This document shows, piece by piece, positions 12,362-63,137 of a DNA stretch of 64,000 nt; within the stretch, counting starts at the first letter, position 1, and every line of letters starts with the position of its first letter. Below the pieces are notes generated by a model. It did not search any database and was not told where the DNA came from. It saw only the letters and a list, made by a program, of their open reading frames with translations. Position numbers and translations under genes: made by a program. The stretch spans positions 186,001-250,000 of IMG/VR virus record IMGVR_UViG_3300030329_006583; one strand, 5' to 3'.

Positions 12362-12955
12362 TTAATCCTCTTCTACGATGCCTGCTTCTTGTGCAATTTT
12401 TAAAACATCAGCCAGTGCCAAAGCAGCGCTGGCAGGACAATGTGTATCGGTCATTTCCATTACTGGACGAATCATCTCATAAGCTTGTGATGGCTCTAGA
12501 ATAAGGGTGTCTCCGGCACGTTTATAAGAATCTGGGCATATGGCCATTTCGGCATTTTCTTCTTTTATCATCGCAAAATCTGAAAGGATTTCTGGGTTCT
12601 CACAATGCCAATTGACATGTGCAGCATAATCGTCTATTGTAACAATTCCATCCTGATCTAGATCAAAATGGTTATAAAGTTCTTCTGGTGAAAGATTGCC
12701 ATCACCATTCGCGTCGGGTGGCCCATGAGAAGCACCATACGTTTCCGTAATCTCCAGGGTTTCTGGTTCCGGGGTTACTTGTGCGGATCCACCCGCCTCC
12801 GAGTGATCAATGGGTTCCACCAGATCATCTCCACCAGCCCAAGCATTTTCAACAGGTTCAACTTCTGCCGGTGAATCAACATCCCAATATTGGTCGGTTA
12901 AATCTTCAAATTCTTCCTTAATGATTCTTCTAAGTTGTCTTTTTGTAATTTTCAT
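12362..12955 (-). CDS. type-A leader protein with an EF-hand pair
   Basis: MKITKRQLRRIIKEE; loops DANGDGNLSPEE and DLDQDGIVTIDD; start re-assigned. Confidence 0.75.
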   Translation of the reverse strand: MKITKRQLRRIIKEEFEDLTDQYWDVDSPAEVEPVENAWAGGDDLVEPIDHSEAGGSAQVTPEPETLEITETYGASHGPPDANGDGNLSPEELYNHFDLDQDGIVTIDDYAAHVNWHCENPEILSDFAMIKEENAEMAICPDSYKRAGDTLILEPSQAYEMIRPVMEMTDTHCPASAALALADVLKIAQEAGIVEED

Positions 12956-12971
12956 TGTATTTTTCTCCGAC

Positions 12972-13280
12972 TCATATCCCAGGTGACATGATATCATCCA
13001 TCCATGTATCGCGCTCCAAGCCCTGGCGTATACCTTCAATGTACACATACAAGGCGAGCGCCTTGTCATCATCGATGCCATCTTTATACGCAGCATACTT
13101 TTCGCGAACTAGTTTGTCTATGACGCCTAGGTTACGCTCGATTTCGCGCCTTTCGCCGCCATCGCTTTTGTCACCGGTAACCGCCCGGGTCTGTGCTTCC
13201 CAATCGGTACCGAGCTGTTCACTGACTCGGGCAACCTCTTCCTTGATGATTCTTCTTAATTGCCTCTTTGTGATTTTCAT
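12972..13280 (-). CDS. type-A leader protein
   Basis: MKITKRQLRRIIKEE. Confidence 0.8.
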   Translation of the reverse strand: MKITKRQLRRIIKEEVARVSEQLGTDWEAQTRAVTGDKSDGGERREIERNLGVIDKLVREKYAAYKDGIDDDKALALYVYIEGIRQGLERDTWMDDIMSPGI

Positions 13281-13289
13281 TGTTTCTTC

Positions 13290-13586
13290 CTATCGCATGG
13301 GGTCATGCATGTGTACTCGCGTAACAGCCTCACCGACACCACCTTCACTCATATCGATCAAACCAGCCGCGATGGCTTTTACTGTCTCACGCACTGTCGA
13401 GGCCTCTACATCTTTACCGCCCTTCTCCAGGAGCTGCGCCAAAAGTTGCAGATCTTTATGGGCATCGTAAAGGCTCTTGAAAGCATCTTCGTGCACTACC
13501 ACGATGCTACGTGCGTACGCTTCCTTGAGAAACCTCTGCTTCTCTTCCTTGATGATTCTTCTTAACTGTCGTTTTGAAATTTTCAT
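13290..13586 (-). CDS. type-A leader protein
   Basis: MKISKRQLRRIIKEE. Confidence 0.8.
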   Translation of the reverse strand: MKISKRQLRRIIKEEKQRFLKEAYARSIVVVHEDAFKSLYDAHKDLQLLAQLLEKGGKDVEASTVRETVKAIAAGLIDMSEGGVGEAVTRVHMHDPMR

Positions 13587-13587
13587 A

Positions 13588-13908
13588 TTATATCACCTTG
13601 GCCCATTGACCATCGTGAAGTTTATTCTCTACTTTGTCAAAACTGCCATGAATTGCCTGCATTATTTCTTCCACTAGCACATCATAGGCTGTGTCTATCT
13701 GTAGTATCCATTCCTCCCTTGTTGACGAGCCAGCAAACATGTCCGGCTGCTGATCAAACAAAGCTTCTTGGTCCTCAGCCCAAAGGCCGGCTATATTCTC
13801 AACTGCCTCTTTAACCTTTTCCTGATAGTATGGATCGAGCTCTTCACGGAGGAGTTTGGCCCTCTCTTCTTTGATAATTCTTTTCAGTTGTCTTTTAGTT
13901 ATTTTCAT
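13588..13908 (-). CDS. type-A leader protein
   Basis: MKITKRQLKRIIKEE. Confidence 0.8.
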   Translation of the reverse strand: MKITKRQLKRIIKEERAKLLREELDPYYQEKVKEAVENIAGLWAEDQEALFDQQPDMFAGSSTREEWILQIDTAYDVLVEEIMQAIHGSFDKVENKLHDGQWAKVI

Positions 13909-13910
13909 TG

Positions 13911-14378
13911 TTACCATTCCTTACACGACCAATACCGTGCTTTTGTTTTTGGTCCTGGGTTATCACAATTGTGCCGAGCATCAAAGCTCTTTTTGGCTTT
14001 TGGATTACTCTTCCTGATCCTGGAATTCGGATCTCCAAACCTGACGACTGTTACATCGTCCTCTTTGGGGCCGTCCTTCACATATACCTTTTTCTGCTTT
14101 TTACCGTATCCGGTTTGTCCTTTACGGATGGCAGTCGGGTTATTAAGCTTTACTTTTCTGCCTTGGTATTCTGCCTCCTTTAAAGGATCACCCTCTACGC
14201 CATCATCTTCTTGTGCAGCCTTCCACGATTTCTCATCGGGATAGTCCTCATCACCTGGCTTCGCCGGCTTTTCTCCGCGCTTTCTCTTGGCATGAATATT
14301 TGCCCAGAGACCCTTCTTTTTTTCTTCTAAAAAGACTTCTCGAATAATTCCCCTGAGTTGTCGCTTGGTGACTTTCAT
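13911..14378 (-). CDS. type-A leader protein with a basic conserved phage domain
   Basis: MKVTKRQLRGIIRE; KKGLWANIHAKRKR and KSFDARHNC...ARYWSCKEW segments. Confidence 0.8.
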   Translation of the reverse strand: MKVTKRQLRGIIREVFLEEKKKGLWANIHAKRKRGEKPAKPGDEDYPDEKSWKAAQEDDGVEGDPLKEAEYQGRKVKLNNPTAIRKGQTGYGKKQKKVYVKDGPKEDDVTVVRFGDPNSRIRKSNPKAKKSFDARHNCDNPGPKTKARYWSCKEW

Positions 14379-14677
14379 AGTTCCATTTCCTGCAAGACCT
14401 GCATGACCAGCTGCTTGAAAGATTTCATTGGACCAACCCTTTTCTCATCCTCGATGCGCCAGACGATGCGCCTAACATCATAAAGAGACGCTTGAATCGC
14501 GTCTTTAATTGCACCTTCAATTGACGCTATAGGGTAGTCCGTATTTCCGCTCTCGATATCCAATGCCAGGTGATCTAAATCATCGAGCACAGTTTCCATA
14601 TCGCTAACAGACTCGCGGACAAGCTTGGCCTTTTCTTCTTTGATGATTCTTCTTAATTGGCGTTTGGTGATTTTCAT
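14375..14677 (-). CDS. type-A leader protein
   Basis: MKITKRQLRRIIKEE; start re-assigned. Confidence 0.8.
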   Translation of the reverse strand: MKITKRQLRRIIKEEKAKLVRESVSDMETVLDDLDHLALDIESGNTDYPIASIEGAIKDAIQASLYDVRRIVWRIEDEKRVGPMKSFKQLVMQVLQEMEL

Positions 14678-15354
14678 GATTTTATCCCTGTGCACAGTAT
14701 TCCATCATTATCCCACTCTCCCACCGGCCATATTTTCCGCCACTGACCTTCGAGCTCTTGTACACGCCAATCACCACCGGTGTTGTCTATAACAATCTCA
14801 TCATCTATGACGTCGACCAGGATATCGGGCCCAAATATTGGAAGTGCCAAATCGTGCACCTCCTGAGCATCCTGTTCTTGCCATGGTTCAACGTGATGGT
14901 GTGCGATGGCTTCTCTAATAATTCTCTTTAGTTGTCGTTTTGTTATTTTCATTTGTTTTCCCTCAGTTCTTCGACGCATGCCTGAGCGTTTCACCAATTC
15001 TTCCCTGTGTTCCGGATCGGGTTGCATGGCCTTAATTTCTTTATCCCTTGCTGCACGTTCCTCTGCGGCTTTTTCGTATTCTTCCTCTGCTTCCATTGCT
15101 TCATGAGCAGCGTCATATTCTTTGTCGATTTCTTTGGCTATCTGATCAGCTGTCATAGTAGCAAACATATGTTGCATGGTGTCGCCGGATGGCCTCACAC
15201 CCCACCTGTATTTGTATGCATCAGAAAACATACCAAGCAAATCATCCTTCTTTTCGGAATCCTCATCGGTAAAGGGTGCAAGAGGAGAATCAACGCCTAA
15301 CGATCGCTGTGCTTCCCTAATGATTCTTTTTAGTTTCTGTTTTGTGATTTTCAT
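14674..15354 (-). CDS. protein with two type-A leaders (N-terminal and internal at 14952)
   Basis: MKITKQKLKRIIRE, then in-frame MKITKRQLKRIIRE preceded by GAGGG. Confidence 0.8.
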   Translation of the reverse strand: MKITKQKLKRIIREAQRSLGVDSPLAPFTDEDSEKKDDLLGMFSDAYKYRWGVRPSGDTMQHMFATMTADQIAKEIDKEYDAAHEAMEAEEEYEKAAEERAARDKEIKAMQPDPEHREELVKRSGMRRRTEGKQMKITKRQLKRIIREAIAHHHVEPWQEQDAQEVHDLALPIFGPDILVDVIDDEIVIDNTGGDWRVQELEGQWRKIWPVGEWDNDGILCTGIKS

Positions 15355-15713
15355 TACATGTCCTCCAGGATTGATTCCGCCGTATCCAATGGGGCTCGTA
15401 CTTTCTCGCCTGCCAAGCCAAGATCATAGGTGAGATCTTTCAATTTGTCTATCGCCATACGAAGAGCATTGGGATTCTGATCGTAGACTACATCTTCAAA
15501 GTCAACATCAGATTCCAGATCTTCAAATGCCTCCCACCCTTTGATCAGGGCATCCACTTGCTCCTGAACCGCAGTACCTAGACTGGCATACGCCTTGGCA
15601 AAAGCGATAAGGGGATCGGAAGGAGAGTCTCCACCAAACCCAAATTGTTCATTGAGGAGCTTGGCTTTCTCTTCCTTGATGATTCTTTTCAATTGTCGTT
15701 TTGTGATTTTCAT
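15354..15713 (-). CDS. type-A leader protein
   Basis: MKITKRQLKRIIKEE. Confidence 0.8.
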   Translation of the reverse strand: MKITKRQLKRIIKEEKAKLLNEQFGFGGDSPSDPLIAFAKAYASLGTAVQEQVDALIKGWEAFEDLESDVDFEDVVYDQNPNALRMAIDKLKDLTYDLGLAGEKVRAPLDTAESILEDM

Positions 15714-15728
15714 TGTTAATTCCTATAA

Positions 15729-16094
15729 TCAGCTCGTAACATATCTCACAGTAGGCGGTGTAGCCGGAACAGCCGTACTATTTTGGGCCGCGGCAGTTAC
15801 ACACCAATGACTGAAACCTGTACTAAACGCAATCCCCTCGGGAAATGCATAACTTCTTTTTACAGATGCAGGACAAAGGAACACCATAGAAGCAGCAGTT
15901 GTCCCGGCCGTAGCGCTAGTAGCGTCAGCTAGTTTAAAATAGACGGCCGTACTATATCCTGTGTTGTCAATCTCCACCATATACAGTGTACCTGCCGCGC
16001 CTGTTGTGTTTTCTACTGCGGTGGCCGCCGCCGCTGTATCCTGAACCAATTTATTAGCTAATGGATTGCTTTGATTAGTAACTGTAACTGCCAT
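15729..16094 (-). CDS. A/T-rich beta protein, probably a virion component (no leader)
   Basis: 121 aa, Ala/Thr-rich; GGAGG SD. Confidence 0.65.
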   Translation of the reverse strand: MAVTVTNQSNPLANKLVQDTAAAATAVENTTGAAGTLYMVEIDNTGYSTAVYFKLADATSATAGTTAASMVFLCPASVKRSYAFPEGIAFSTGFSHWCVTAAAQNSTAVPATPPTVRYVTS

Positions 16095-16147
16095 AACTTA
16101 ATACCCTCCGCCGATTGTAAATAGAAACATGCTTTTTGTAATTTTCA

Positions 16148-16465
16148 CTACCCTATGCTCCCACCCGGATTTCTGCCCACTAATTCGTCCACTGTCACAA
16201 AATAGGCCTCAAGTTGTTTAAAGAAACTATTTAATCTCTCAACTTGCATCCCAAGATCCACAGCCAGTTCATCCCCCGCTTGCACACCCGGCTCACTAGG
16301 ATCTTGAAGACCATATATGCCATTTGCAATTTCCTCAATAGAAGATGCAATACCATCTAGTTCTGCCATCATTGAACCTTCAGTGGAAGCCATAGACTGT
16401 TCTTTTATCAACTTTGTTTTTTCTTCTTTTATGATTCTTCTAAGCTGTCTTTTTGTGATTTTCAT
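16148..16465 (-). CDS. type-A leader protein
   Basis: MKITKRQLRRIIKEE; start re-assigned. Confidence 0.8.
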   Translation of the reverse strand: MKITKRQLRRIIKEEKTKLIKEQSMASTEGSMMAELDGIASSIEEIANGIYGLQDPSEPGVQAGDELAVDLGMQVERLNSFFKQLEAYFVTVDELVGRNPGGSIG

Positions 16466-16466
16466 T

Positions 16467-16679
16467 TTATAGCTCGCCATGTTTAAAGTCTTCCAGAGCC
16501 TCTAAGGCATCGGCACCAGTCATCCAATTTCCCACCAGATAATTAACCAGCTGTTCAGCTGAAACGCCCATCATTTCGAGTTCTTCTAAAATTGCAAAAG
16601 CAGCCTGGCGATTCTCGTTTAAGAGCTTCGACTTCTCTTCCTTAATGATTCTTTTCAATTGTCGTTTTGTAATTTTCAT
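16467..16679 (-). CDS. type-A leader protein
   Basis: MKITKRQLKRIIKEE. Confidence 0.8.
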   Translation of the reverse strand: MKITKRQLKRIIKEEKSKLLNENRQAAFAILEELEMMGVSAEQLVNYLVGNWMTGADALEALEDFKHGEL

Positions 16680-16703
16680 CTTAGTTTCCTTTATTAATAT
16701 TCA

Positions 16704-17048
16704 TTAATCAGCAGTGTGACGATAATAATCCACTTTTACCGACATCCCATCATCCGTCACTGTGTGAGTGTACACCCCTGAAAGTGCGGCATACGGATCC
16801 TTCTTTTGTTGTATTTCAAGATTATTGAAAACATCAACATCACCTTGAGGGATGGGCTGCCCGTCTTTGCGAACATATACCTGTGTACTCCTCACATCAC
16901 CACGATTACGACCATACGGATAACTTACCGAACCACTACCAACAGTCTCATAATGTTGATCCAATAAATCCCGATGTTGAGACCATATATTTTCCTGCAA
17001 AAGTGCTTCCTTAATTATACCTCGCAACTGAGGGATTGTGATTAACAT
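16704..17048 (-). CDS. type-A-like leader protein
   Basis: MLITIPQLRGIIKEALLQE; AGGAG SD. Confidence 0.7.
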   Translation of the reverse strand: MLITIPQLRGIIKEALLQENIWSQHRDLLDQHYETVGSGSVSYPYGRNRGDVRSTQVYVRKDGQPIPQGDVDVFNNLEIQQKKDPYAALSGVYTHTVTDDGMSVKVDYYRHTAD

Positions 17049-17050
17049 TA

Positions 17051-17554
17051 TCAGCTCCTGCGATCCCGAGTGCCCCATCTCCCATAGGAATCATCACGCC
17101 TATCACGATAACTCTGTTTTTTGCCTGACTCAGCACCGGTACGCATACCCAATGATTCATCCTCTTTATCATCATATCCCTGGTGGCCTTCTTCCATATC
17201 GTCCTCTGCCAGGTTTTCTTCAACCAATTGGCGAATTCGTTGGCGTAAAGCGGCCTGCTTATTTAATTTCGCTTTTTCTTCTTTTACTATTTGGCGCAGC
17301 TGCCTCCTACCCAAGGCTCGGCCTCGGCGGCGACGAGACTCATGTTTTTCTCTTTCATGTTCCAGCTCTTCTTCGTGAGCGCGCTCCATCTCTTCCCGAT
17401 CATCCTTAATGTCTTTCTCAAGATTATCAATATGATCCTTGTCATCATCAATGTTTTTACGAAGATTATCCAGCTCATCACTGATGCTATCCTCGGCAAG
17501 GCGCCGAACTTCTTCCTTTACGATTTTTCTCAATTGTCTCTTTGTGATTCTCAT
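17051..17554 (-). CDS. type-A leader protein, highly charged coiled coil
   Basis: MRITKRQLRKIVKEE plus internal RRQLRQIVKEE. Confidence 0.75.
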   Translation of the reverse strand: MRITKRQLRKIVKEEVRRLAEDSISDELDNLRKNIDDDKDHIDNLEKDIKDDREEMERAHEEELEHEREKHESRRRRGRALGRRQLRQIVKEEKAKLNKQAALRQRIRQLVEENLAEDDMEEGHQGYDDKEDESLGMRTGAESGKKQSYRDRRDDSYGRWGTRDRRS

Positions 17555-17844
17555 CCTCTCATTCTCCTTGCCATTCCCAGCTGTTGTCCCACATTTTGCG
17601 CATCAACAGTATCCCCTTGATCCAAATCCTGTTGGCGCTGTTGTGTTAATTTCTTAACTTGATCCGCCGAGGCTTGTTCCTCGTCGACATCATCTCCACT
17701 TAATGAAGTATCCATTCCCATGTCACCCACGGCAAGAAAACCTTCATCATCATCACTTTTCTCCTGGGGGGCTGTATAACCCACAACCTGTTCCCGCAGA
17801 ATCTCCCTTATTACATTTCGCAATCTGTACTCTGTAACTCTCAT
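17551..17844 (-). CDS. type-A-like leader protein
   Basis: MRVTEYRLRNVIREILREQ. Confidence 0.7.
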   Translation of the reverse strand: MRVTEYRLRNVIREILREQVVGYTAPQEKSDDDEGFLAVGDMGMDTSLSGDDVDEEQASADQVKKLTQQRQQDLDQGDTVDAQNVGQQLGMARRMRG

Positions 17845-18152
17845 GCAGTTGTCACCCTACCTATTAACATCATACTGTCACCCTCCGTATCGCCACCTAT
17901 AATTACGGAGCGTATCTTTTGGCACAATCCCTTTACCCATTCTTTCAAACCCAATCGTTTTGTGGGTACCGGAATTTGCATACATTGTTTGGTATAGGCT
18001 TTCATAATAAAACGGGCGGCCAAACGAGAACCATATTTTTTAGCAATTACATGAACAATTTGTTGGGTTTTTGGGTTTAACTCAACAAACATCTCACGTA
18101 ATTCTGACCTGGTTGGCAATTGCCTGTTTTTCATTTTATTCACCGTAATCAC
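17841..18152 (-). CDS. hypothetical basic protein
   Basis: 103-aa ORF inside the array, no clear leader. Confidence 0.5.
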   Translation of the reverse strand: MITVNKMKNRQLPTRSELREMFVELNPKTQQIVHVIAKKYGSRLAARFIMKAYTKQCMQIPVPTKRLGLKEWVKGLCQKIRSVIIGGDTEGDSMMLIGRVTTA

Positions 18153-18387
18153 TTATCAACTCGCTGGCATTTTGTTTGCGGGCCCTATCTGCTGCGGCTT
18201 GTAAAAAATCAGCCATAGTAATACCAGCTAACGCCGGTGCTTGTTCCACCGAGATGTCATCGCGTACTAGTCGAATGGCCTCATCTAAATACATGTGGAA
18301 AATATCGGTAACATGATCCCGAGCTGCCTCAGTGTTAAATTGTTCATGAATTATTTTTTGAAGTTGTTTACGAGTAATTTTCATCAT
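18136..18387 (-). CDS. type-A leader protein
   Basis: MMKITRKQLQKIIHEQ; GAGG SD. Confidence 0.75.
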   Translation of the reverse strand: MMKITRKQLQKIIHEQFNTEAARDHVTDIFHMYLDEAIRLVRDDISVEQAPALAGITMADFLQAAADRARKQNASELISDYGE

Positions 18388-24942: not shown

Positions 24943-25302
24943 TTAGCTCTTGAGTTTTCTACCTGGTCTTGTTGCATGCTCATGTGTTTTTGATGCTGCC
25001 GCTTCAACCATTCTGGCGGGCACGTTCTTGAGCGTTTTCTTGCCGAACACAATATCATAATGGCCAATGGCACCGTTCCTGTCAAGACTATGCCACACAA
25101 TTTTACCCACCCTTTTAGCCGGGATCCCATATGCCTCCTGCAAAGCTGAAGACTTCAGCTTACCATGTGTCAGTCACGTGTGCCCGATCAATTCTTCCTC
25201 TTCGGGATCCAACTCCGCTTGTTCCATACCTGACCCGAATGGTGCAGCTTTCTTCAATTCTTCTTTAATAATTTGCCTAAGTTGTCTCTTCGTAATTTTC
25301 AT
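24943..25302 (-). CDS. candidate selenoprotein: type-A leader, in-frame TGA at codon 43 (25174-25176)
   Basis: Manual translation MKITKRQLRQIIKEE...LIGHT(TGA)LTHGKLKSSALQEAYG...KTHEH...; the frame stays open for 76 sense codons after the TGA; hairpin 3' of the TGA. Confidence 0.7.
25143..25161 (-). promoter_or_regulatory. candidate bacterial SECIS hairpin
   Basis: AAGCUGAA-GUC-UUCAGCUU: 8-bp stem, loop starts with GU, 20 nt after the UGA. Confidence 0.6.
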
Positions 25303-30804: not shown

Positions 30805-31839
30805 TTATACACTTTGTTGATACAACCGTAAAGCCTCAATTTGACGTTCATTTAAATTTTGAGGAATAACAATTTCCACCTTTGTTAAGTGATCGCCTCG
30901 CCTTCCTTTGTGATCCTCTATCCCTTTACCTTTCATTCTCAAAATGGAATTAGGTTGAGTGCCGGCCGGAACATTAATATCCGTCAGGCCATGTACTGTC
31001 TTCACCTTAGTCATTCCCCCTAGGGTTGCAGTAACCATATCTACATGTAATACATTAAGCACATTAAGACCATCCCTACCATAATACGGTGATTGTTGAA
31101 TTCTGACGTATACGTTCAAATCACCAGGTGGCATTACGGATTGGGTGCTTTCGCCTTTTCCTTTAATTTGAACCACATCACCATCATCAATCCCCTTCGG
31201 AATTTGAATCTCAATGCCTTCCTTATTTACAACCTTCCCTTTACCGGTACAACTTTGGCACTTTTCTTTTATTGTTTTCCCATGCCCGCCACAAGATGGA
31301 CATGTGGTAGTAACACTAAAAAACCCTTGCTGCCCAATCACCTGCCCTCGGCCTCCGCATGTAATGCATGTTTGCGGCAATGTACCAGGTTTACAGCCGG
31401 AACCAGAACAAGTAACACAATTAACATAACGTTCAAGTTCTAGAGTGCGTACACAACCTTTAACCGCCTCATCAAAAGACAACGGAATTTCTACGTCAAT
31501 ATTGCGATTGCGCTGGACGCGATGAGTTTGTCTTCCAAAGAAATCACCGAAAATACTACCAAATTGATCAAAGATATCCCCAAATCCCGCAGAGGTGGCC
31601 CCAAATCCATCAAAATTAAACGCATCATGTCCACCAGCGTCATATTGTGCACGTTTCTCCGGATCACTTAATACCGCATATGCTTCACTAATTTCCTTAA
31701 ACTTTTCTTCTGCCTTAATATTATCTGGGTTTTTATCTGGATGATATGTAACGGCAAGTTTACGATAAGCTTTTTTGATTTCTGCCCCGGTGGCATTTTC
31801 ACTTACCCCTAACAAGGTGTAATAATCTTTTTTTGACAT
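30805..31839 (-). CDS. dnaJ: chaperone DnaJ
   Basis: J domain with HPD, G/F region, four CxxCxGxG repeats, C-terminal domain. Confidence 0.95.
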
Positions 31840-31842
31840 GGA

Positions 31843-33312
31843 TTATTCCGATCTTCTCTTAAACTCTTTCATTAATTTTTCCGCCTGCTCCTCATATTCT
31901 GCGAGATTTGCCCAAGATTTATCAGGGGAAAGCATACTTTCATCAATTCCATTAAATTTTACCGGAATTTTCAAACCTGTATAAGGATGAAGTTGATAAT
32001 CTGCTTTTTTTAATGTTCCATCATGAATACCGGCTATTATCTTTCGAGTTACATCGATGGGCATACGATGGCCTATCCCATACCCGCCACCGGTCCACCC
32101 TGTATTAACAAGCCAACAATCTACTTTATGCTTCTCAATTTTTCCCTTTAATAAGTGTGCATATTCCTGAGGAAACCGGGGCATAAATGGTGCGCCGTAA
32201 CAATAGGAAAAAGTTGCCTCCGGTTCTTTCACCCCTGCCTCGGTGCCAGCCACCTTGGCCGTATACCCCAGAAGAAAGTGTTGTACAGCTTCCTCGGGAG
32301 TAAGCTTGGAAACCGGGGGTAGAATCCCAAAGGCATCACATGTTAACATTACAACATTGGCTGGATGTCCAGCGGCACCAGTTTTACTGGAATTACTAAT
32401 ATATTCAATTGGGTAAGATGCACGTGTGTTCTCTGTGAGTGTTGCATCATTAAAATCTGGGGTTCTATCATCATGAAGGATAACGTTCTCTAGAATGGCA
32501 CCGTGCCTTTGGCAGGCATTCCAGATTTGTGGTTCAGCTTTCGCGTCAAGCCGAATCACCTTGGCATAACAACCGCCTTCAAAATTATAAAGACCTGTGT
32601 CCGACCAAGAGTGTTCATCATCCCCAATCAATACCCGATCTTCCTCCGACGAAAGTGTTGTCTTACCTGTCCCAGACAGTCCAAAAAATATTGCCGGAGC
32701 CCCTCCATCCTCTGCGGTGTTCACAGAACAATGCATGGGCAGAATTCCTTTTGCCGGCAGAAGAAAATTCAGAACAGTGAATACGCTTTTCTTAATTTCC
32801 CCGGCATAATAAGTACCGCTAATCAATATTTCTTGTTCTTGAAATGAAATGAGAACCATAGGATCTGAGGTAAAGGTCGGTGCGGCATAAATCGTCCATT
32901 CATCTTCTTGCCCTGTTAACATGTGTTCAATCAATTCGGGCCTAACAAACATATTCCTTGCAAATATACTGTGCCACAATAATGTTGTATTGACTTTAAG
33001 CCTCAAAGTGTTTGCAGGATCACGATTGGCGTAAAGCGTTTGTGTATATATTCCGGTTTCCCCCGCTTTTGCAAGGTGCTCTTTCATCCTATCACGGGTA
33101 TACAGAAATTCGTGATGGGTAATACTTTGATTGGCATCCCAATTAATTTTTCCTTGCGTAATGGAATCACACACAATAGATTTTGCCTTAGGTGAACGAC
33201 CCGTGCAATCGCCGGTAGCGGTGACCAAGGCACCACCCCCAGATTCATTAGCTTCCCCCAATTGGAGGGACATCCGTGTTAATTCTTTTAATGAAAATTC
33301 ATCTAATAACAT
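31843..33312 (-). CDS. pckA: phosphoenolpyruvate carboxykinase (ATP)
   Basis: TGRSPK, YAGEIKK, PMHCS, FFGLSGTGKTTLS, IGDDEH, NFEGGCYAK, ENTRASYP. Confidence 0.95.
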   Translation of the reverse strand: MLLDEFSLKELTRMSLQLGEANESGGGALVTATGDCTGRSPKAKSIVCDSITQGKINWDANQSITHHEFLYTRDRMKEHLAKAGETGIYTQTLYANRDPANTLRLKVNTTLLWHSIFARNMFVRPELIEHMLTGQEDEWTIYAAPTFTSDPMVLISFQEQEILISGTYYAGEIKKSVFTVLNFLLPAKGILPMHCSVNTAEDGGAPAIFFGLSGTGKTTLSSEEDRVLIGDDEHSWSDTGLYNFEGGCYAKVIRLDAKAEPQIWNACQRHGAILENVILHDDRTPDFNDATLTENTRASYPIEYISNSSKTGAAGHPANVVMLTCDAFGILPPVSKLTPEEAVQHFLLGYTAKVAGTEAGVKEPEATFSYCYGAPFMPRFPQEYAHLLKGKIEKHKVDCWLVNTGWTGGGYGIGHRMPIDVTRKIIAGIHDGTLKKADYQLHPYTGLKIPVKFNGIDESMLSPDKSWANLAEYEEQAEKLMKEFKRRSE

Positions 33313-34320: not shown

Positions 34321-34797
34321 TTAACCCAGGCCCTGGAATCCATTGGAACCTGTGAGCATCTGCCGTATGGGATTTGACGGAACGGTTGTTAAACCCGCTA
34401 TAACGTGAATCGTCGCCGCACCACCATAACCTCCGTCACGGAAAAAAACCCCGCTGGCCTTTACCTCATACGGGCCGGCATAGGTACCTCCCTCAAACAC
34501 CTTTATGTAATTACGATTAGAACCGGTGAGATTGTAGCCTGGGTTGGGGGTTGTGACCCCGGCGGTGGCACTTGAACCATGTGTACCATTTGCGGTAAAA
34601 CCCATCAAAATAGGCGCAGTTCCACCAACTCCATGCTGTGCCACGTAGATCCATCGCGATACAAAAGGGAAGTGAAAATGGATGAAAGGATTAGAACCAT
34701 CGAGCTCACCAGTAAGCGAGGAACTCACGTATGGAATCCCGGATAACTGGTACTCTTGCACGTTGTTGTGATCATTTGCAGGCCAATTTAAACTCAT
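34321..34797 (-). CDS. putative virion protein, paralog 2
   Basis: MSLNW...YQ.SGIP.V.SS; clear similarity to 34802-35242. Confidence 0.65.
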   Translation of the reverse strand: MSLNWPANDHNNVQEYQLSGIPYVSSSLTGELDGSNPFIHFHFPFVSRWIYVAQHGVGGTAPILMGFTANGTHGSSATAGVTTPNPGYNLTGSNRNYIKVFEGGTYAGPYEVKASGVFFRDGGYGGAATIHVIAGLTTVPSNPIRQMLTGSNGFQGLG

Positions 34798-34801
34798 TTA
34801 A

Positions 34802-35242
34802 TCACCCAATTCCCTGGAAACCGTTTGAGCCCGTAAGCAATCGCCTCAAAGGATCGGCTGGAACATTTGTTAAGCCCGCTATTACCTGAACGGTGCTGGC
34901 GCCGCCTTCACCTTGGAAATAAAGATCTGTGCAACGTACCTCTATGGGTCCCAAGGATTTCCCGGCATCGACCACCGCGTAATTCATGTTTGAACCCGTG
35001 GGACTGTAAGCGCCTAGGTTTGCAGCCAGAATACCGTTTGCGGTAAACGACATTTTAAACCCATTACCTTGTTCAGTACATACCACTTGAATCCAGCGTG
35101 TAACAAATGGGAATCTTATATGAACCAAATCACCGGCACCGGCAGTCACCTCATTATCTAGCGATGAGGTAACAAACGGAATTCCTGACTGTTGATATGC
35201 TGGCACATAATTATGATTGTTTCCAGCCCAATTTAAACTCAT
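34802..35242 (-). CDS. putative virion protein, paralog 1
   Basis: Shares N-terminus and C-terminal LTGSNGFQG with 34321-34797. Confidence 0.65.
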   Translation of the reverse strand: MSLNWAGNNHNYVPAYQQSGIPFVTSSLDNEVTAGAGDLVHIRFPFVTRWIQVVCTEQGNGFKMSFTANGILAANLGAYSPTGSNMNYAVVDAGKSLGPIEVRCTDLYFQGEGGASTVQVIAGLTNVPADPLRRLLTGSNGFQGIG

Positions 35243-40029: not shown

Positions 40030-41910
40030 TTAAACATCAGTAATTTCTGGCTCAGGGGAACCCGGGTTTGGATCCGTGGGATTAACGTCTTCCGGACTGA
40101 CGGGGGCTGATGCCGCCATTTTTTCATAAGCAATTTTTGCCACATTCTGAACACATGCATTTAACGCATTATAAGCATCATCAACCTCTTGGCGTGTTTC
40201 AGATGTTAAAGCGCTTTTGGCACTTTCAGCGGCAGTTACCAACGCCTCAATATCAGCTTCATCCAAACTTTCCGCCATGTTTTCCTTCATTTTAAAAGCC
40301 TGGTGAACTAGGGAATCTAATTTATTTCTAGATTCAATCATCTCACGTTTTTTCTGATCTTCAGCTTCGTATTTGGTGGCCTCCTTGATTTTTTCTTCAA
40401 TCTCCTCGGGGTTTAGGCCCGTAGAATCTGTAATAACAATACTTTGATCCTTACCGGTGGCCTTGTCGCTGGCAGACACTGTCAAAATACCATTAGCATC
40501 AATATCAAAGGTTACTTCAATTTGTGGTACACCTCTCGGTGCAGGTGGAATTCCATCCAATGTAAATTTGCCCAGTGTACGATTATCACCCGCCATCTGC
40601 CTTTCACCCTGAAGTACATGTACCTCGACTGTTGATTGACCATCTGCTGCGGTAGAAAATATTTCCTGCTTTTTAGCCGGAATTGTAGTATTACGCTCAA
40701 TGAGCCGAGTACACACACCGCCCATCGTTTCAATCCCCAAAGATAAAGGGGTAACATCCAACAACAGGATGTCTTTTACATCCCCACTCAGCACGCCTCC
40801 CTGAACCGCGGCGCCCAAAGCAACTACCTCATCCGGATTAACACCTTGTGACGGAGACTTTCCAAAAAATTCCTCCACCTTTTTAACCACCAAGGGAATC
40901 CGTGTAGAACCACCAACCAACAAAATCTGATCAATATCTGTTGATTTCTTACCGGCGTCCTTAAGTGCCTGCTTACAAGATTTAAAAGTCTTATCAATCA
41001 CGCCCTCAATCAATTGTTCGAATTTAGAACGCGTCAAATTCATCACCAAGTGTTTGGGCCCATTAGCGTCAGCAGTCAAAAATGGCAAATTAATATCAGC
41101 TGTCATAGCCGAGCTTAATTCCACCTTTGCCTTTTCGGCAGTTTCACGAATACGTTGCAAAGCCATTTTATCCTCTGCAACATCTACCCCTGTTTCCTTC
41201 TTAAATTCCGCAATCATATAATCAATGAGAGCCTCATCAACGTTATCACCGCCTAGGTATGTATCCCCTGAAGTTGACAGTACTTCCACGACATCTCCGG
41301 AAACATCCAAAACTGACACATCAAAAGTACCACCACCAAAATCATAAACCACTACCACTTGTTCTGTATTGGTGCCGAGACCATAAGCCAAAGCAGCGGC
41401 AGTGGGTTCATTAATAATTCTCTTGACATCTAGGCCCGCAATCGTACCTGCATCCTTGGTCGCCTGTCGTTGGGAATCATTAAAATAGGCAGGAACTGTA
41501 ATTACGGCTTCTGTAATTTTCTCCCCCAGGTAATTCTCAGCAGATCGCTTTAATTTTTGTAGCACTTTGGCTGAAATTTCTGGTGGTGTGAACGCCTTGT
41601 CTCCCACGGTGATGTTAACGCCACCCTTCTTACCTGCACTAACATTATACGCAACCTTGCCGGCAACGTCTGATACTTCATTGAATTTAGATCCAATGAA
41701 TCTTTTCGCAGAATAAATCGTCTGTTCCGGTTTGACAACAGCTTGTCGGCGTGCGGTGACACCAACCAAAATATCGTCATCATTAAAAGATACCACAGAA
41801 GGTGTTGTGCGAGAACCTTCCTCGTTCACCATCACAACAGGTTGTTCTCCTTCCATAACCGCCACGCAGCTGTTAGTAGTCCCCAAATCAATACCAATAA
41901 TTTTACCCAT
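40030..41910 (-). CDS. dnaK: Hsp70 chaperone DnaK
   Basis: [48 protein letters not shown]. Confidence 0.97.
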
Positions 41911-42006
41911 GATCTCTTCCTCCATTCATTTCCACGGTAAAGTTTTTTCTTACAATGTCAATATAGTCATCGATGTGTCGTTGAACACCCTTGCAATGCA
42001 TTTTTT

Positions 42007-44813: not shown

Positions 44814-46424
44814 TTATGTTAAAATTTCTTCATCATCCACAATGGCACAACCCACAGAAAGTAACATCCTCGCAACTGATGATGCATTTTCCAAGGCTGT
44901 TCTCACAACCTTTACGGGATCAATGATTCCTGTTTCAAACATATTTACCCACTCCCCGGTGGCCGCATTATATCCACTATTATAACTTGTTTTTATTGCC
45001 TTTTGCACGACAATTTCTGAACTTCCTCCAGAATTATCTACAATTTGTTTAAGCGGGGCGCAACATGCTTTGGAAACAATGTCAATGCCTACTTTAAAAT
45101 CCTCTGATTCCTTAACAGATTTGCGATTTTTTTTCAAACTGGATGATGCACGAACTAACGCCATACCACCCCCTGATACCACGCCTTCTTCGGAGGCAGC
45201 CTGGGTGGCGTGTAACGCATCTTCTACGCGATCTTTTCTCTCCAGCAATTCTACCTCGGTAGGTGCACCCACACGAAGAACAGCAACCCCACCTGCCAAG
45301 CGTTGAATTCTTCTCGCCAAAGCCTCTCTTTCACCCGGGTCAAGGGTCATATCCTCTAAAATAGATTTTACCTCACACAATGCCTGTTTCCGAGATTCTT
45401 CACTGCCCCCTACGCCCACAAACACAGTGCGATGTTTATAACACAAAACCTTCTTACATTTTCCTAAATCATTTAATTCGATTTTCTGTAATGACTCAGG
45501 ATCAGCTGTCACCACTGGCTCACAATCCAACATTACCCCCATATCACGTATAGCAGCAACTCGAGATTCACCAAATTCCGGAGCTCGAATAGCACATACA
45601 TTCAAAGTACCTTTCATTCGATTTAAAACCAGGCCTTGCAATGCCTCCCCATCCACATCATCTGCCACAATGAGTAGAGAACGCTGTTGGCGACTTACTT
45701 TTTCTAATATAGGCAGAATCTCCTGTAAGGATGTAAGTTTCTTATTGATAAGCAAAACGGCGGGATTTTCCAAAACTGCTGCCATTTTATCCTGATCAGT
45801 CACAAAATAAGGGGAAAGAAAACCGCGATCTAATTCTAAACCCTCCACCACATCCAAGCTAGTTTGAAACCCCTTGGCTTCCTCCACAGTAATAATACCA
45901 TCTTTCCCAACCTGTTTCATGGCCGAAGCGATTAATTCACCAATGGAATCCTCTCCATTTGCTGAGATTGTACCTACCTGCGCAATTTCTTCCATGCTGG
46001 TAATGGGATTTGCCATTTCATGCAATTCACTAATAACATACTTTACCCCATATTCCATTCCCTTTTGAAGCTCTGCCGAAGAATAACCTGCAGCTAGCAT
46101 CTTTAAACCTTCGGAAAACATAGTCTGGGCAAGGACGGTAGCAGTTGTGGTACCATCCCCGGCAACATCCGCAGTGCGAGAAGAAGCTTCCTTCACCATC
46201 TGCACCCCTAAATTCCTAAACTTATCACGCAAATTAATGGATTTAGCAACTGTTACCCCATCCTTGGTCAAATGCGGCATCATTCCGGGGCGTTCAATAA
46301 TAACATTCTGCCCTTTTGGCCCCATGGTAACCTTAACAGCATTGGCCAAAATATTGACCCCGTCAACCAATTCTGACCGGGCTGTTTCATCAAATTTTAA
46401 AGTTTTAAATTCTGTATCGTGCAT
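44814..46424 (-). CDS. groL: chaperonin GroEL
   Basis: VKVTMGPKGQNV, TKDGVTVA, AGDGTTTA, KLAGG-like RLAGGVAV, GIIDP.KV; no GGM tail. Confidence 0.95.
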   Translation of the reverse strand: MHDTEFKTLKFDETARSELVDGVNILANAVKVTMGPKGQNVIIERPGMMPHLTKDGVTVAKSINLRDKFRNLGVQMVKEASSRTADVAGDGTTTATVLAQTMFSEGLKMLAAGYSSAELQKGMEYGVKYVISELHEMANPITSMEEIAQVGTISANGEDSIGELIASAMKQVGKDGIITVEEAKGFQTSLDVVEGLELDRGFLSPYFVTDQDKMAAVLENPAVLLINKKLTSLQEILPILEKVSRQQRSLLIVADDVDGEALQGLVLNRMKGTLNVCAIRAPEFGESRVAAIRDMGVMLDCEPVVTADPESLQKIELNDLGKCKKVLCYKHRTVFVGVGGSEESRKQALCEVKSILEDMTLDPGEREALARRIQRLAGGVAVLRVGAPTEVELLERKDRVEDALHATQAASEEGVVSGGGMALVRASSSLKKNRKSVKESEDFKVGIDIVSKACCAPLKQIVDNSGGSSEIVVQKAIKTSYNSGYNAATGEWVNMFETGIIDPVKVVRTALENASSVARMLLSVGCAIVDDEEILT

Positions 46425-52242: not shown

Positions 52243-52596
52243 TTAAAATGTATTCAATACCACATGCGCAAACAGGGTCTCAGTTTGAGGATCCCAATAA
52301 AATTGCTTAGGCCCACCGGGCATGCCGGGAGTCAATGATGAAAAGAAATGATCGGCTTGCTCTTGCGGCGGGAGACCTTTCTTAGACGACCACACCTCAT
52401 GCTGATCCGGCTTATAACTTGCCCGCGGGATATTCTGGGTCATTGCCCTAACCTCTTCCACTGTCCCAATCTTAACATCCATCTCTCTTCCGGATGGAGT
52501 TACAATCACAGTGGGGGCGCCCATGAGTTCTGCACTCTGCTCTCGCAAGAGTACTTCACCAATAATTTTCCTGAGTCGATTCTTTGTAATTTTCAC
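52243..52596 (-). CDS. type-A leader protein
   Basis: MKITKNRLRKIIGEVLLRE. Confidence 0.7.
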   Translation of the reverse strand: MKITKNRLRKIIGEVLLREQSAELMGAPTVIVTPSGREMDVKIGTVEEVRAMTQNIPRASYKPDQHEVWSSKKGLPPQEQADHFFSSLTPGMPGGPKQFYWDPQTETLFAHVVLNTF

Positions 52597-61406: not shown

Positions 61407-62015
61407 CTATATCCCGCCTTCAGCTGCGATTGGGCTAGCCCCTACACCCATCGGATCCACTAAATCCTGAGGGATGTCTAGACTAATATCGTACCTGAGA
61501 TCTAAAATATCCAACATCGCGGCTGCCTGCTCGGGCCCGTATTTGTCGGTGATATAATCTTCTGCTTTTTTTACAATTAACGCCTTCATATCCAGAAGTG
61601 AATCATAATTCTTGGCTAACCTTGCTACGTCACCTGCAAATGTTTCCATATCAATTACCGGAATTTCCTCCTGTTCGTAAAGCACACGAACTATTGAGTA
61701 TTTGTTGGCCTCATTTTGTGCCTGACCTTTGGCGGCATTGATAGCATCTGTCTCAAAATCCACAAAAAGGGCATTAAGTTCATCATCAACTGATTTACCC
61801 AAAGGTTCCACTTCATCCACCCCTGGTTCTATTTGGGCCTCTTCCGCCTCAGCTTCAACTTCCGCTTCTGGGCCTTCTTCATCACCAGGTGTTTCTTCCG
61901 CATCTTCCTCAGTGGCTTCTTCAGTATCAGCCATATCGGCTTCTTCTTCTTGTTCCACAAGGAGCCTGAACTCTTCGTTTATTAGCTTTTTTAAATACTT
62001 TTTTGTCAATTTCAT
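61407..62015 (-). CDS. acidic protein with a type-A leader
   Basis: MKLTKKYLKKLINEE. Confidence 0.7.
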   Translation of the reverse strand: MKLTKKYLKKLINEEFRLLVEQEEEADMADTEEATEEDAEETPGDEEGPEAEVEAEAEEAQIEPGVDEVEPLGKSVDDELNALFVDFETDAINAAKGQAQNEANKYSIVRVLYEQEEIPVIDMETFAGDVARLAKNYDSLLDMKALIVKKAEDYITDKYGPEQAAAMLDILDLRYDISLDIPQDLVDPMGVGASPIAAEGGI

Positions 62016-62710
62016 TTGATTGCCTTCCCGATTTTTTCAGCCTTTTTAACCCTTTTCTCAATTACATCCCAATCTAATTCTTTCATCATAGCAAAAACAT
62101 ACGTCTTTCTGTCATTCAAATAATCACGATAATAAGAATTTTCCGAACAATCTAAAACAACAATTGGAAACGATGCAAAAGGAACATTAATATTATGCAG
62201 ATCTACACACACATTAATATAACGTTGAAGAAAGGTATTATAGACAGTGACTGCCCACCCATTTCTAGATGACATAGCGCATGCAATAAAATCCTTTTGC
62301 CACGCATCAAAAGAACCAAAATCCCTCTCCAACCTTATAAAAGTAAGAGAATCCATTACTAATTGACTTTTGAGATCACTAATATTTTCAAAAAACAAAG
62401 CATTCAAAAATGAAGCATTAAGATTGTAGGTTTCATCAATCTTCAAAGAACGAAATTCTGAATTATTGGCATTTGCATCTTCACGATTAACAACATCCAA
62501 TTCAATACTAATACGATTAAGGGTATCTATGTATCCTTCAAGCAATTCAAAATGAGCACGTTTATTTTTTTCACTTAAAAATTCTGTAGCTAAATTATAT
62601 CGTTTGGCTTGGGTAACATATGCCTCCTTAATGGTGGCGTGTCCTTCTTTTTCTTCCAACCCCAACGTTTCCCTGATCGTTCTTTTTATTTCATCATCAG
62701 ATATGCTCAT
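62012..62710 (-). CDS. Fe/Mn superoxide dismutase-fold protein with degenerate metal ligands
   Basis: HFELLEGY, LNALFFENI, DFGSFDAWQKDF, GWAV, VLDCSENSYY. Confidence 0.75.
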   Translation of the reverse strand: MSISDDEIKRTIRETLGLEEKEGHATIKEAYVTQAKRYNLATEFLSEKNKRAHFELLEGYIDTLNRISIELDVVNREDANANNSEFRSLKIDETYNLNASFLNALFFENISDLKSQLVMDSLTFIRLERDFGSFDAWQKDFIACAMSSRNGWAVTVYNTFLQRYINVCVDLHNINVPFASFPIVVLDCSENSYYRDYLNDRKTYVFAMMKELDWDVIEKRVKKAEKIGKAIK

Positions 62711-62711
62711 T

Positions 62712-63137
62712 TTATTTAACCTCATATTCTTTTTCAAATTCTTCTTGATCCACCACAAACACCTCTTCATCAGGATCATCGGGTATTAATTCTGTTTGTA
62801 TTTTATCTAAATTAATTAATTCATCTTCACCTAATATTGCCGCAATTTTTTTATCACTGATCAAAGTATCCTCTTGATCGGGTGGGGGATCAAAACGGGG
62901 TTCATCAGGCAATCTTAAAACAATGTCAATTTTACCGGTCTCCGGATCTTCCAAAACATCATCCACAGTGTATTCATATTGAGAATCTTTATGCCTCACC
63001 TTTAAATCACGCGTTATAAGAATATTACCGTCGTCATCTATCACGTCAGATTCCCAAAGGGCTTCGTTTAAACGATCCTCGTAATAATTACGCAATAAAT
63101 CAATTATAACATTTTCTGATAAAATTTTATTTTTCAT
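62712..63137 (-). CDS. acidic hypothetical protein
   Basis: 141-aa ORF in the run. Confidence 0.6.
   Translation of the reverse strand: MKNKILSENVIIDLLRNYYEDRLNEALWESDVIDDDGNILITRDLKVRHKDSQYEYTVDDVLEDPETGKIDIVLRLPDEPRFDPPPDQEDTLISDKKIAAILGEDELINLDKIQTELIPDDPDEEVFVVDQEEFEKEYEVK

What the first reader, a model, noticed from the sequence alone, without database searches (positions are those of the whole stretch)
12362..18387. Array of small genes sharing a MKITKRQLRRIIKEE leader: putative capsid-targeting tag
Seen: 14 ORFs start with this leader or a close variant (12955, 13280, 13586, 13908, 14378, 14677, 15354, 15713, 16465, 16679, 17048, 17554, 17844, 18387). More copies occur at 25302, 52596, 58264, 59843 and 62015. 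After the leader the proteins are unrelated and mostly acidic. The leader is a basic amphipathic helix ending I-I-(K/R)-E. Established: T4 internal proteins carry a roughly 10-aa capsid-targeting sequence (MKTYQEFIAE) that prohead protease gp21 removes after Glu at (I/L)-x-E. Inference: a modular address tag that loads dozens of cargo proteins into the head for ejection, or binds a common partner.
Basis: partly seen in the sequence, partly recalled or inferred. Interest (0 to 1): 0.9.

Follow-up and report, generated by a model that had tools for sequence, protein, structure and literature searches.

The report
Shared head-targeting tag on phage genes
An uncultured 267-kb marine relative of phage T4 puts the same 15-residue N-terminal tag on at least 18 unrelated small proteins; the tag most likely loads them into the virus head and is then cut off, as in T4's internal proteins, but on a much larger scale.

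Summary
All 14 listed starts lie on the minus strand and open with M-K-I-T-K-R-Q-L-[RK]-[RK]-I-I-K-E-E or a variant. Copies at 25302, 52596 and 62015 are significant; 58264 and 59843 are not. Two in-frame internal copies (14952, 17308) were missed. Synonymous codons vary freely, so selection acts on the peptide. The bodies share no detectable similarity and are mostly acidic.

The genome is a circular ~267-kb marine phage. About 62 kb upstream of the window it carries a T4-type head module: terminase, gp20 portal, a gp21-family (S77) prohead protease, a scaffold-like protein and a gp23 capsid protein. The leader ends in I-[KR]-E, which fits the gp21 rule. The capsid protein's conserved predicted maturation site is L-[RK]-E. 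The two small genes just after the protease carry leader-like N-termini. In sister phages canonical leader genes sit inside the head module.

A leader profile finds 10,294 protein clusters in public data, none named. I found no description in the families or papers searched.

Best reading: a T4-like capsid-targeting propeptide, a new variant of a known kind (confidence about 0.6). Cleavage and packaging are inferred, not shown.

The parts
12362..12955 (-). Leader gene, 197 aa. Canonical leader with a very acidic body (pI 4.05) and weak, sub-threshold EF-hand matches.
   Evidence: E = 5.6e-13; called as 197 aa
12972..13280 (-). Leader gene, 102 aa, canonical leader.
   Evidence: E = 3.4e-13
13290..13586 (-). 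Leader gene, 98 aa (MKISKRQLRRIIKEE).
   Evidence: E = 2.6e-11
13588..13908 (-). Leader gene, 106 aa.
   Evidence: E = 4.8e-12
13911..14378 (-). Leader gene, 155 aa (MKVTKRQLRGIIRE). This is the only clearly basic body (pI 9.6). The body matches several PHROG families of unknown function.
   Evidence: E = 4.2e-10
14375..14677 (-). Leader gene, 100 aa.
   Evidence: E = 1.4e-12
14674..15354 (-). ORF of 226 aa made of two leader-plus-body units in one frame. The first leader starts at 15354 (MKITKQKLKRIIRE) and the second, which keeps its Met, at 14952.
   Evidence: E = 3.2e-8 and 1.5e-12
15354..15713 (-). Leader gene, 119 aa. It has 244 homologues in metagenomes. The model shows a leader helix, a disordered linker and a helical bundle.
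15729..16094 (-). Gene of 121 aa inside the array WITHOUT the leader. It is Ala/Thr-rich and has no family match.
16148..16465 (-). Leader gene, 105 aa.
   Evidence: E = 3.3e-11
16467..16679 (-). Leader gene, 70 aa.
   Evidence: E = 6.2e-12
16704..17048 (-). Leader gene, 114 aa, with a degenerate leader (MLITIPQLRGIIKEA).
   Evidence: E = 2.5e-7
17051..17554 (-). Leader gene, 167 aa (MRITKRQLRKIVKEE), with a degenerate second copy in frame at 17308 (RRQLRQIVKEEKAKL).
   Evidence: (E = 1.2e-5 for the inner copy)
17551..17844 (-). Gene of 97 aa with a divergent leader (MRVTEYRLRNVIREIL). It matches the relaxed pattern only.
   Evidence: (E = 0.2)
17841..18152 (-). Gene of about 100 aa inside the array without the leader.
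18136..18387 (-). Leader gene, 82-83 aa (M-MKITRKQLQKIIHEQ). It is the first gene of the array in the direction of transcription.
   Evidence: E = 4e-8
25174..25302 (-). Isolated leader gene, 42 aa (MKITKRQLRQIIKEEL).
   Evidence: E = 1.6e-11
52243..52596 (-). Isolated gene of 117 aa with a GTG start and a divergent leader (KITKNRLRKIIGE).
   Evidence: E = 5.3e-6
61407..62015 (-). Isolated gene of 202 aa with a divergent leader (MKLTKKYLKKLINEE) and a very acidic body.
   Evidence: E = 1.8e-5

Best explanation
The leader is a capsid-(prohead-core-)targeting propeptide of a T4-related jumbo phage. The N-terminal basic amphipathic helix (M1, I3, T4, Q7, L8, I11, I12) docks each tagged protein onto the scaffolding core while the prohead assembles. 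The phage's gp21-family protease then cuts after the invariant Glu14 (I-I-[K/R]-E | E/A/S). The freed, mostly acidic cargo stays in the head and enters the host with the DNA. The tag is portable, so new genes gain packaging by acquiring it. This gives fast-evolving arrays and in-frame fusions of several units.

Shown: the tag, its N-terminal position, selection at the peptide level, the unrelated cargo, the T4-type head genes and protease in the same genome, and the placement of tag genes inside head modules of relatives.

Inferred: docking, cleavage, retention in the head and ejection.
For: 1) The same genome encodes Terminase_6N, Portal_T4, Peptidase_S77, a 562-aa acidic scaffold-like protein and a Gp23 capsid protein, in T4 order. 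The protease aligns with T4 gp21 (PDB 5JBL, E = 9.7e-16).

2) Among 394 non-redundant leaders, conservation is 85-98% at positions 2-5, 7, 8, 11, 12 and 14. It collapses after Glu14/Glu15, where position 16 has no residue above 26%. That is the pattern expected for a tag that ends at a cleavage site. I-[KR]-E fits the gp21 rule in which residues 8 and 10 (I-x-E) of the T4 targeting sequence govern processing (PMC9026906).

3) In 66 related capsid proteins the N-terminal region ends in a conserved Q-x-L-[RK]-E followed by a variable linker. This site lies about where mature T4-type gp23 begins in the alignment. So the likely capsid cut site has the same hydrophobic-basic-Glu form as the leader.

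4) A relaxed leader pattern hits only 19 places in 135.7 kb, and none in the reversed control. Two of the four hits outside the array are the two small genes immediately after the protease. Four of the five related loci checked keep the leader-like start M-(A)-K-[LV]-[KS]-R-x-x-L-K-x-[LI]-[IV]-K-E-C on the first of these genes.

5) In sister phages, canonical leader genes lie between portal and protease (L062), directly after the protease (L039), directly after the capsid gene (L035) and just before the terminase (L051, L053).

6) 96% of 504 leader hits in 67 viral loci begin at a start codon. The 398 cargo bodies fall into 206 unrelated clusters.

7) The model shows the leader helix joined to the folded body by a disordered linker.

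8) ORFs with two to four leader-cargo units in one frame are common, 6% of the leader-bearing reading frames in the 67 loci and all of the top global hits. A tag that is cut off tolerates such fusions.

Against: There are no proteomic or N-terminal data, so cleavage and packaging are untested. T4 internal proteins are basic, while about 77% of these cargo bodies have pI below 5.5. Acidic proteins packed beside DNA would be unusual and would fit expendable core proteins as well. In this genome the array lies more than 100 kb from the head module, among auxiliary genes. The profile does not find the head-module proteins p137 and p92 significant (E about 6); only the relaxed pattern and the eye do, and that comparison was made after the fact. 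Only 4 of 80 capsid-gene loci of the wider clade have leader genes nearby, so the tag belongs to sub-lineages. The leader shares no more with the T4 targeting sequence than the M-K start and the I-x-E end.
Confidence: 0.6

Rival explanations
1. The tag does send the proteins to the prohead core, but they are expendable core or scaffold accessories, like T4 gp67, gp68 and gp22. They would be degraded and expelled before DNA packaging, not retained and ejected as effectors.
For: The bodies are acidic, as is the 562-aa scaffold-like protein of this phage. The leader-like proteins p137 and p92 occupy the gp67/gp68-like position next to the protease. In L039 a large leader protein follows the protease, where T4 has its scaffold gene.
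Against: More than 200 unrelated bodies in 67 loci and more than 10,000 clusters worldwide is the turnover expected of host-interaction effectors, not of assembly parts. One cargo is a YkuD-type peptidoglycan enzyme. Another has a confident compact fold.
Confidence: 0.12
2. The helix docks the proteins onto a common partner unrelated to the capsid. Candidates are the phage's own DnaK/DnaJ/GroEL set, a ClpXP-type N-terminal degron (the phage encodes ClpP), or a host target.
For: The window encodes DnaK, DnaJ and a chaperonin, and the genome encodes ClpP. A hydrophobic core flanked by basic residues resembles known DnaK-binding and ClpX N-terminal motifs; this rests on my own knowledge and was not tested.
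Against: This does not explain the sharp end of conservation at Glu14, the match to the capsid protein's predicted cut site, or the placement of tag genes inside head modules of relatives.
Confidence: 0.13
3. These are fast-diverging paralogues, and only the functional N-terminal motif, for example a basic nucleic-acid-binding helix, has stayed recognisable.
For: The helix carries about six basic residues. The array looks like tandem duplication. Most bodies are small and predicted helical.
Against: The bodies range from 42 to 551 aa and include a YkuD enzyme fold and an EF-hand-like segment. Orthologues of one body are well conserved (about 41-51% identity, one close relative at 85%) yet unrelated to their neighbours. 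Leaders occur repeatedly inside single ORFs.
Confidence: 0.08
4. The conserved stretch works at the DNA or RNA level, as a translation-initiation enhancer, a recombination site or a product of gene conversion. The peptide would be incidental.
For: The A-rich codons after ATG would be expected to favour translation initiation (my own knowledge, not tested). Tandem and duplicated leaders suggest recombination between copies.
Against: Synonymous sites vary freely while the residues are fixed. Conservation extends 15 codons with an amphipathic periodicity. There is no conserved upstream sequence. Promoter-like sites are not enriched: 20 found against 16.8 expected.
Confidence: 0.03

Closest known systems
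Capsid targeting sequence (CTS) of the phage T4 internal proteins IPI, IPII, IPIII and Alt, removed by prohead protease gp21
   Same: It is a short N-terminal propeptide shared by otherwise unrelated, non-essential, fast-evolving small proteins. It ends in a hydrophobic-x-Glu motif. A gp21-family protease and a T4-type portal, scaffold and capsid gene set lie in the same genome. The genes cluster in variable loci away from the head genes (PMC3012670, PMC9026906).
   Different: The sequence differs: M-K-I-T-K-R-Q-L-R-R-I-I-K-E here against the 10-residue T4 tag. It is longer and strongly basic. The cargo is mostly acidic, not basic. The numbers are far larger: at least 18 per genome here, up to 29 in 20 kb of a relative, and 10,294 clusters in public data, against a handful in T4. 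Units are often fused in frame. The host phage is a distant T4 relative with a PolIII-alpha replicase. Function is untested.
N-terminal propeptides of head and ejection proteins in giant phages phiKZ, 201phi2-1 and SPN3US, cleaved at (S/A/G)-x-E
   Same: Many internal head proteins of a jumbo phage are processed by a T4-gp21-like protease after Glu (PMC5694885, PMC7411985).
   Different: I am not aware of a shared, conserved tag on those propeptides (own knowledge, not checked here). The cleavage motif has a small residue at P3, not Ile or Leu.
T4 prohead core proteins gp67 and gp68
   Same: They are small proteins encoded beside the protease gene, built into the core and cut by gp21. In this phage p137 and p92 hold that position and carry the leader-like N-terminus.
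   Different: No sequence similarity to gp67 or gp68 was detected (no PHROG or Pfam hit). Here the genes follow the protease gene rather than precede it.

Membership tests
T4-type capsid-targeting sequence / internal-protein system | The tag is at the extreme N-terminus of otherwise unrelated proteins. | tested here: met
   96% of 504 hits begin at a start codon. 206 unrelated body clusters were found. No similarity exists between bodies in the window.
T4-type capsid-targeting sequence / internal-protein system | The tag ends in the gp21 processing motif (Ile/Leu-x-Glu). | tested here: met
   I11 94%, I12 96%, K/R13 88%, E14 97%, and conservation collapses after position 15. The rule is taken from PMC9026906.
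T4-type capsid-targeting sequence / internal-protein system | A gp21-family prohead protease is encoded by the same genome, within a T4-type head module. | tested here: met
   The ENA contig that carries the array has PF03420 Peptidase_S77 between Portal_T4 and Gp23. The protease matches 5JBL at E = 9.7e-16.
T4-type capsid-targeting sequence / internal-protein system | The tag is homologous in sequence to the T4 tag. | tested here: not met
No phage in GenBank gives a tblastn match to a leader protein.
T4-type capsid-targeting sequence / internal-protein system | The cargo are small basic proteins that lie with the DNA. | tested here: not met
   Median body pI is 4.6, and 77% are below 5.5.
T4-type capsid-targeting sequence / internal-protein system | The tag is necessary and sufficient for encapsidation and is removed in the head. 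| not testable with these tools
   This needs virion proteomics or a reporter fusion in a cultured relative.
Sec or Tat signal peptides | A hydrophobic h-region of 10 or more uncharged residues follows the basic n-region. For Tat, there is also a near-invariant RR in S/T-R-R-x-F-L-K. | tested here: not met
   The leader is followed by charged residues (E-E-K-x-K). Positions 9 and 10 are often K or Q, 31% and 21%.
RiPP leader peptides (for example prochlorosin / NHLP precursors) | A short variable core peptide follows a long conserved leader, with a modifying enzyme encoded nearby. | tested here: not met
   The cargo is 42-551 aa and folded. No lanthipeptide or other RiPP enzyme appeared among the Pfam hits of the window or the loci.

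The most novel reading that the evidence does not exclude
The leader may not be a cleaved capsid tag. It could be the address label of an undescribed phage-encoded sorting system, serving more than 10,000 protein families in marine jumbo phages. Examples would be delivery to the phage's own chaperone or ClpP machinery, or to an intracellular compartment. A second possibility is that the multi-leader ORFs are true polyproteins that the head protease cuts into many effectors, which would be a way of expressing genes not known in tailed phages.
Probability: 0.15. Interest if true: 0.9.

Novelty: new variant of a known kind. Interest (0 to 1): 0.72.

Why it matters
If the tag works as inferred, one short motif marks which proteins a large and abundant group of uncultured marine phages carry in their heads and inject into hosts. 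That would be at least 10,294 protein clusters, almost all without any annotation. Injected proteins are the first phage products to meet host defences, as T4 IPI does with the GmrSD nuclease. The tag would therefore give a sequence-only catalogue of candidate anti-defence and take-over effectors. It would also offer a ready packaging signal for engineering, and an example of how one portable propeptide lets a phage recruit new cargo by simple gene fusion.

Tried and rejected
- Megablast and tblastn of the array and of a leader protein against GenBank phages found nothing.
- Pfam and PHROGs on leader proteins gave no family for the leader. Bodies gave only sub-threshold hits, apart from PHROGs of unknown function for the basic protein.
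- PHROGs on the head-module small proteins gave nothing.
- A literature search for the leader string found no papers.
- T4 late-promoter motif TATAAATA: 4 on each strand against about 8 expected, so it gives no information.
- Sigma-70 promoter and terminator scans of the array were near chance.
- Fold search of the modelled cargo against the PDB gave nothing below E = 1.5.
- An ESM Atlas look-up of p137 returned only unnamed viral clusters.
- Host inference from GTDB genomes gave only a few MAG contigs of inconsistent taxonomy, most likely misbinned phage.
- Metatranscriptome contigs mostly match only the leader segments, from relatives. Two 150-nt pieces match this phage with 0 and 1 differences, but DNA carry-over cannot be excluded.
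- One look-up failed because I guessed the wrong start for the SOD-like gene.
- I considered and rejected a giant eukaryotic virus, suggested by one GVMAG-labelled contig. The sigma-70 factor, peptide deformylase, DnaK of bacterial type and T4-type virion genes argue against it.

Full report
OBSERVATION

The region 12362-18387 is a run of 16 tightly packed minus-strand genes. Fourteen begin with M-K-I-T-K-R-Q-L-[RK]-[RK]-I-I-K-E-E or a recognisable variant.

- Two genes in the run lack the leader: 15729-16094 and 17841-18152.
- Two ORFs hold a second leader in frame. One is at 14952 and still begins with Met. The other, at 17308, is degenerate.
- Outside the array, 25302 is a perfect copy on a 42-aa protein. 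52596 and 62015 are significant divergent copies.
- 58264 and 59843 do not pass a profile test.
- One more copy lies outside the window, next to the PolIII-alpha gene (L149:1445, E = 1.5e-4).
- A relaxed pattern finds 19 matches in six frames of 135.7 kb of this genome. All are on the coding strand, and the reversed sequence gives none.

WHAT IS CONSERVED

Synonymous positions vary freely. Leu8 uses six codons and Arg uses four, and third-base identity between identical residues is 57%. Upstream DNA is not conserved. Selection therefore acts on the peptide.

Across 394 non-redundant leaders from related viral contigs, M1, K2, I3, T4, K5, Q7, L8, I11, I12 and E14 are 85-100% conserved. Conservation collapses after E14/E15.

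Past residue 22 the bodies show no pairwise similarity, and 15 of 18 are acidic. In orthologues of the 15713 protein, the first 16 residues are almost invariant while the proteins as a whole share about 41-51% identity, with one close relative at 85%. AlphaFold2 (mean pLDDT 84.7) gives a leader helix (5-23), a disordered linker (25-31) and a confident helical bundle with no PDB counterpart.

WHAT GENOME THIS IS

The window corresponds to bases 186001-250000 of IMG/VR contig IMGVR_UViG_3300030329_006583, which is 267,118 bp. The same genome was assembled from Tara Oceans run ERR594341 as a 267,145-bp contig with a different start point, which indicates a circular or circularly permuted genome.

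The window encodes a sigma-70 factor, peptide deformylase, DnaK, DnaJ, a chaperonin, PEPCK, GMP reductase, UvdE, a TilS-like PP-loop protein and a 5'-3' exonuclease. Nearly all are on one strand. This is a bacteriophage.

I walked upstream from the window end in seven look-ups. That gave:
- PolIII alpha, ThyA, TK, dCMP deaminase, an intein-bearing RNR and ClpP;
- malate synthase, isocitrate lyase, ThyX, DnaB, RecA and PolA;
- large tail proteins, a T4 baseplate protein, a gp19 tube protein, two sheath-like proteins and gp13;
- a gp23-type capsid protein (650 aa), a 562-aa acidic scaffold-like protein and ribosomal protein S21;
- four small proteins, Peptidase_S77 (202 aa), a 287-aa protein, Portal_T4 and Terminase_6N.

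The protease aligns with T4 gp21 (PDB 5JBL, E = 9.7e-16). It has His and Ser where the crystallised T4 chain reads Ala. My inference is that these are the catalytic pair and that 5JBL is an inactivated mutant. The nearest cultured capsid proteins are those of Flavobacterium phage immuto (44.7%) and Microcystis phage Mel-JY01. The phage is thus a deep T4 relative.

LINKS BETWEEN LEADER AND HEAD ASSEMBLY

(a) The leader ends in I-[KR]-E. In T4, processing of the targeting sequence depends on residues 8 and 10, that is I-x-E (PMC9026906).

(b) In 66 related capsid proteins the conserved N-terminal region ends in Q-x-L-[RK]-E, followed by a variable Gly/Ser-rich linker. This site lies about where mature T4-type gp23 starts in the alignment. 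The probable capsid cut site and the leader end therefore share a hydrophobic-basic-Glu form.

(c) Of the four relaxed-pattern hits outside the array, two are the two small genes directly after the protease, p137 and p92. Relatives of p137 in four of five related loci checked keep the leader-like start M-(A)-K-[LV]-[KS]-R-x-x-L-K-x-[LI]-[IV]-K-E-C. The profile itself does not rate these as significant, so this point is suggestive only.

(d) In sister phages whose portal and protease are about 47-52% identical to ours, canonical leader genes lie between portal and protease (L062) and directly after the protease (L039). They also lie upstream of the terminase (L051, L053). In L035, a closer relative (protease 71% identical), they lie directly after the capsid gene. 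These are the places where T4 keeps its prohead-core genes.

SCALE

The 67 loci fetched hold 504 leader hits, all on the gene strand, with up to 29 in 20 kb. Of these, 96% sit at a start codon. The 398 cargo bodies fall into 206 unrelated clusters, and Pfam recognises almost none. One is a YkuD-type peptidoglycan enzyme.

A leader profile run against 1.84 billion representative proteins finds 10,294 clusters at E <= 0.001. The top hits carry two to four leader-cargo units in one frame.

Among GTDB species genomes the leader occurs only on a few MAG contigs of inconsistent taxonomy, most likely misbinned phage. Of 80 capsid-gene loci from the wider clade, only four have leader genes nearby. The tag therefore belongs to sub-lineages.

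INTERPRETATION

The best-supported mechanism is a T4-like capsid-targeting propeptide. The helix docks the protein on the scaffolding core, the gp21-family protease cuts after Glu14, and the cargo stays in the head. T4 reviews describe exactly this logic: diverse internal proteins share only a targeting sequence (PMC3012670). They also suggest it may be a general way for T4-like phages to load proteins (PMC9026906).

The differences here are the tag sequence, its basic character, the acidic cargo, the very large numbers and the frequent in-frame fusions. Cleavage, packaging and ejection are all inferred.

The rivals are:
- expendable core proteins rather than ejected effectors;
- a docking helix for chaperones, ClpXP or a host target;
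- diverged paralogues with a functional basic helix;
- a DNA- or RNA-level signal, which the codon analysis largely excludes.

VERDICT

The feature is a new variant of a known kind. I found no description of it: no Pfam or PHROG family covers the leader, and the literature search for the leader string found no paper. It is widespread enough to matter.

Noticed in passing
L156:12129-12359 (same genome, about 59 kb beyond the window's right end): A ribosomal protein S21 gene sits inside the head-morphogenesis module, between small head-module genes and the scaffold-like gene.
   Followed up: no
window 30805-31839, 40030-41925, 44814-46424: The phage encodes a full chaperone set: DnaJ, a DnaK of bacterial type (about 54% identity to bacterial DnaK) and a Cpn60/GroEL-like chaperonin.
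   Followed up: partly
window 31843-33312; L150:2887-5647: The phage carries gluconeogenesis and glyoxylate-shunt genes: PEPCK in the window, and malate synthase plus isocitrate lyase upstream. A 179-kb Tara viral genome with aceBA and T4-like structural genes was reported earlier, host unknown (PMC5332604).
   Followed up: partly
L149:1930-5532; L151:6603-9986: The replicase is a bacterial-type PolIII alpha (1200 aa), which differs from the family-B polymerase (gp43) that T4 uses (own knowledge). The RNR large subunit carries an intein with an HNH domain.
   Followed up: no
window 34321-35242: Two adjacent paralogues (146 and 158 aa) are homologous to a gene that lies directly after the prohead protease in related phages (for example L120:5752). 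A small ORF with a weak leader-like start (35457) lies just upstream of them.
   Followed up: partly
window 62012-62779: A protein with only the C-terminal domain of Fe/Mn superoxide dismutase. The gene caller starts it at M-S-I-S-D-D-E-I-K-R-T-I-R-E-T, which faintly resembles the leader but is not significant.
   Followed up: partly
window 13911-14378: The one basic cargo carries a G-L-W-A-N-I-H-A-K-R-K-R-G segment that matches eight PHROG families of unknown function. This body module is shared with many other phages that lack the leader.
   Followed up: no
P0121, P0137, P0214, P0215, P0263 (public metagenome proteins): Single ORFs contain three or four leader-cargo units in frame. In P0214 some internal leaders have lost the Met (T-K-I-T-K-S-Q-L, N-K-I-T-K-S-K-L) yet keep the motif, as would be expected if the leader works inside a polyprotein.
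   Followed up: partly
L155:6257-7794 (same genome, just after the capsid gene): Three tandem paralogues of about 160 aa share the start M-P-K-x-K-Y-x-x-S-K-G-L-Y. They may be decoration or vertex proteins. No family match was found for the one tested with PHROGs (the 161-aa gene).
   Followed up: no
L006 (GVMAG-S-1030632-100), L158/L164 (Methylococcaceae TMED69, 305,838-bp contig), L160 (Halobacteriovorax MAG): Contigs with leader arrays are filed in public bins as giant-virus or bacterial MAGs. They look like misbinned jumbo-phage genomes.
   Followed up: partly
window 12900-16700: Marine metatranscriptome contigs align almost only to the ~50-nt leader-coding segments, at 85-90% identity, and then run on into unrelated sequence. 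This shows that many different leader genes are present in RNA libraries.
   Followed up: partly
L156:14136-14190 (capsid protein N-terminus): The capsid protein starts with F-[ST]-L-x-Q-L-T-E-G-I-R. This shares the T-x-x-Q-L-x-x-x-I spacing of the leader. The leader might mimic the capsid propeptide's scaffold-binding helix, which is speculative.
   Followed up: no
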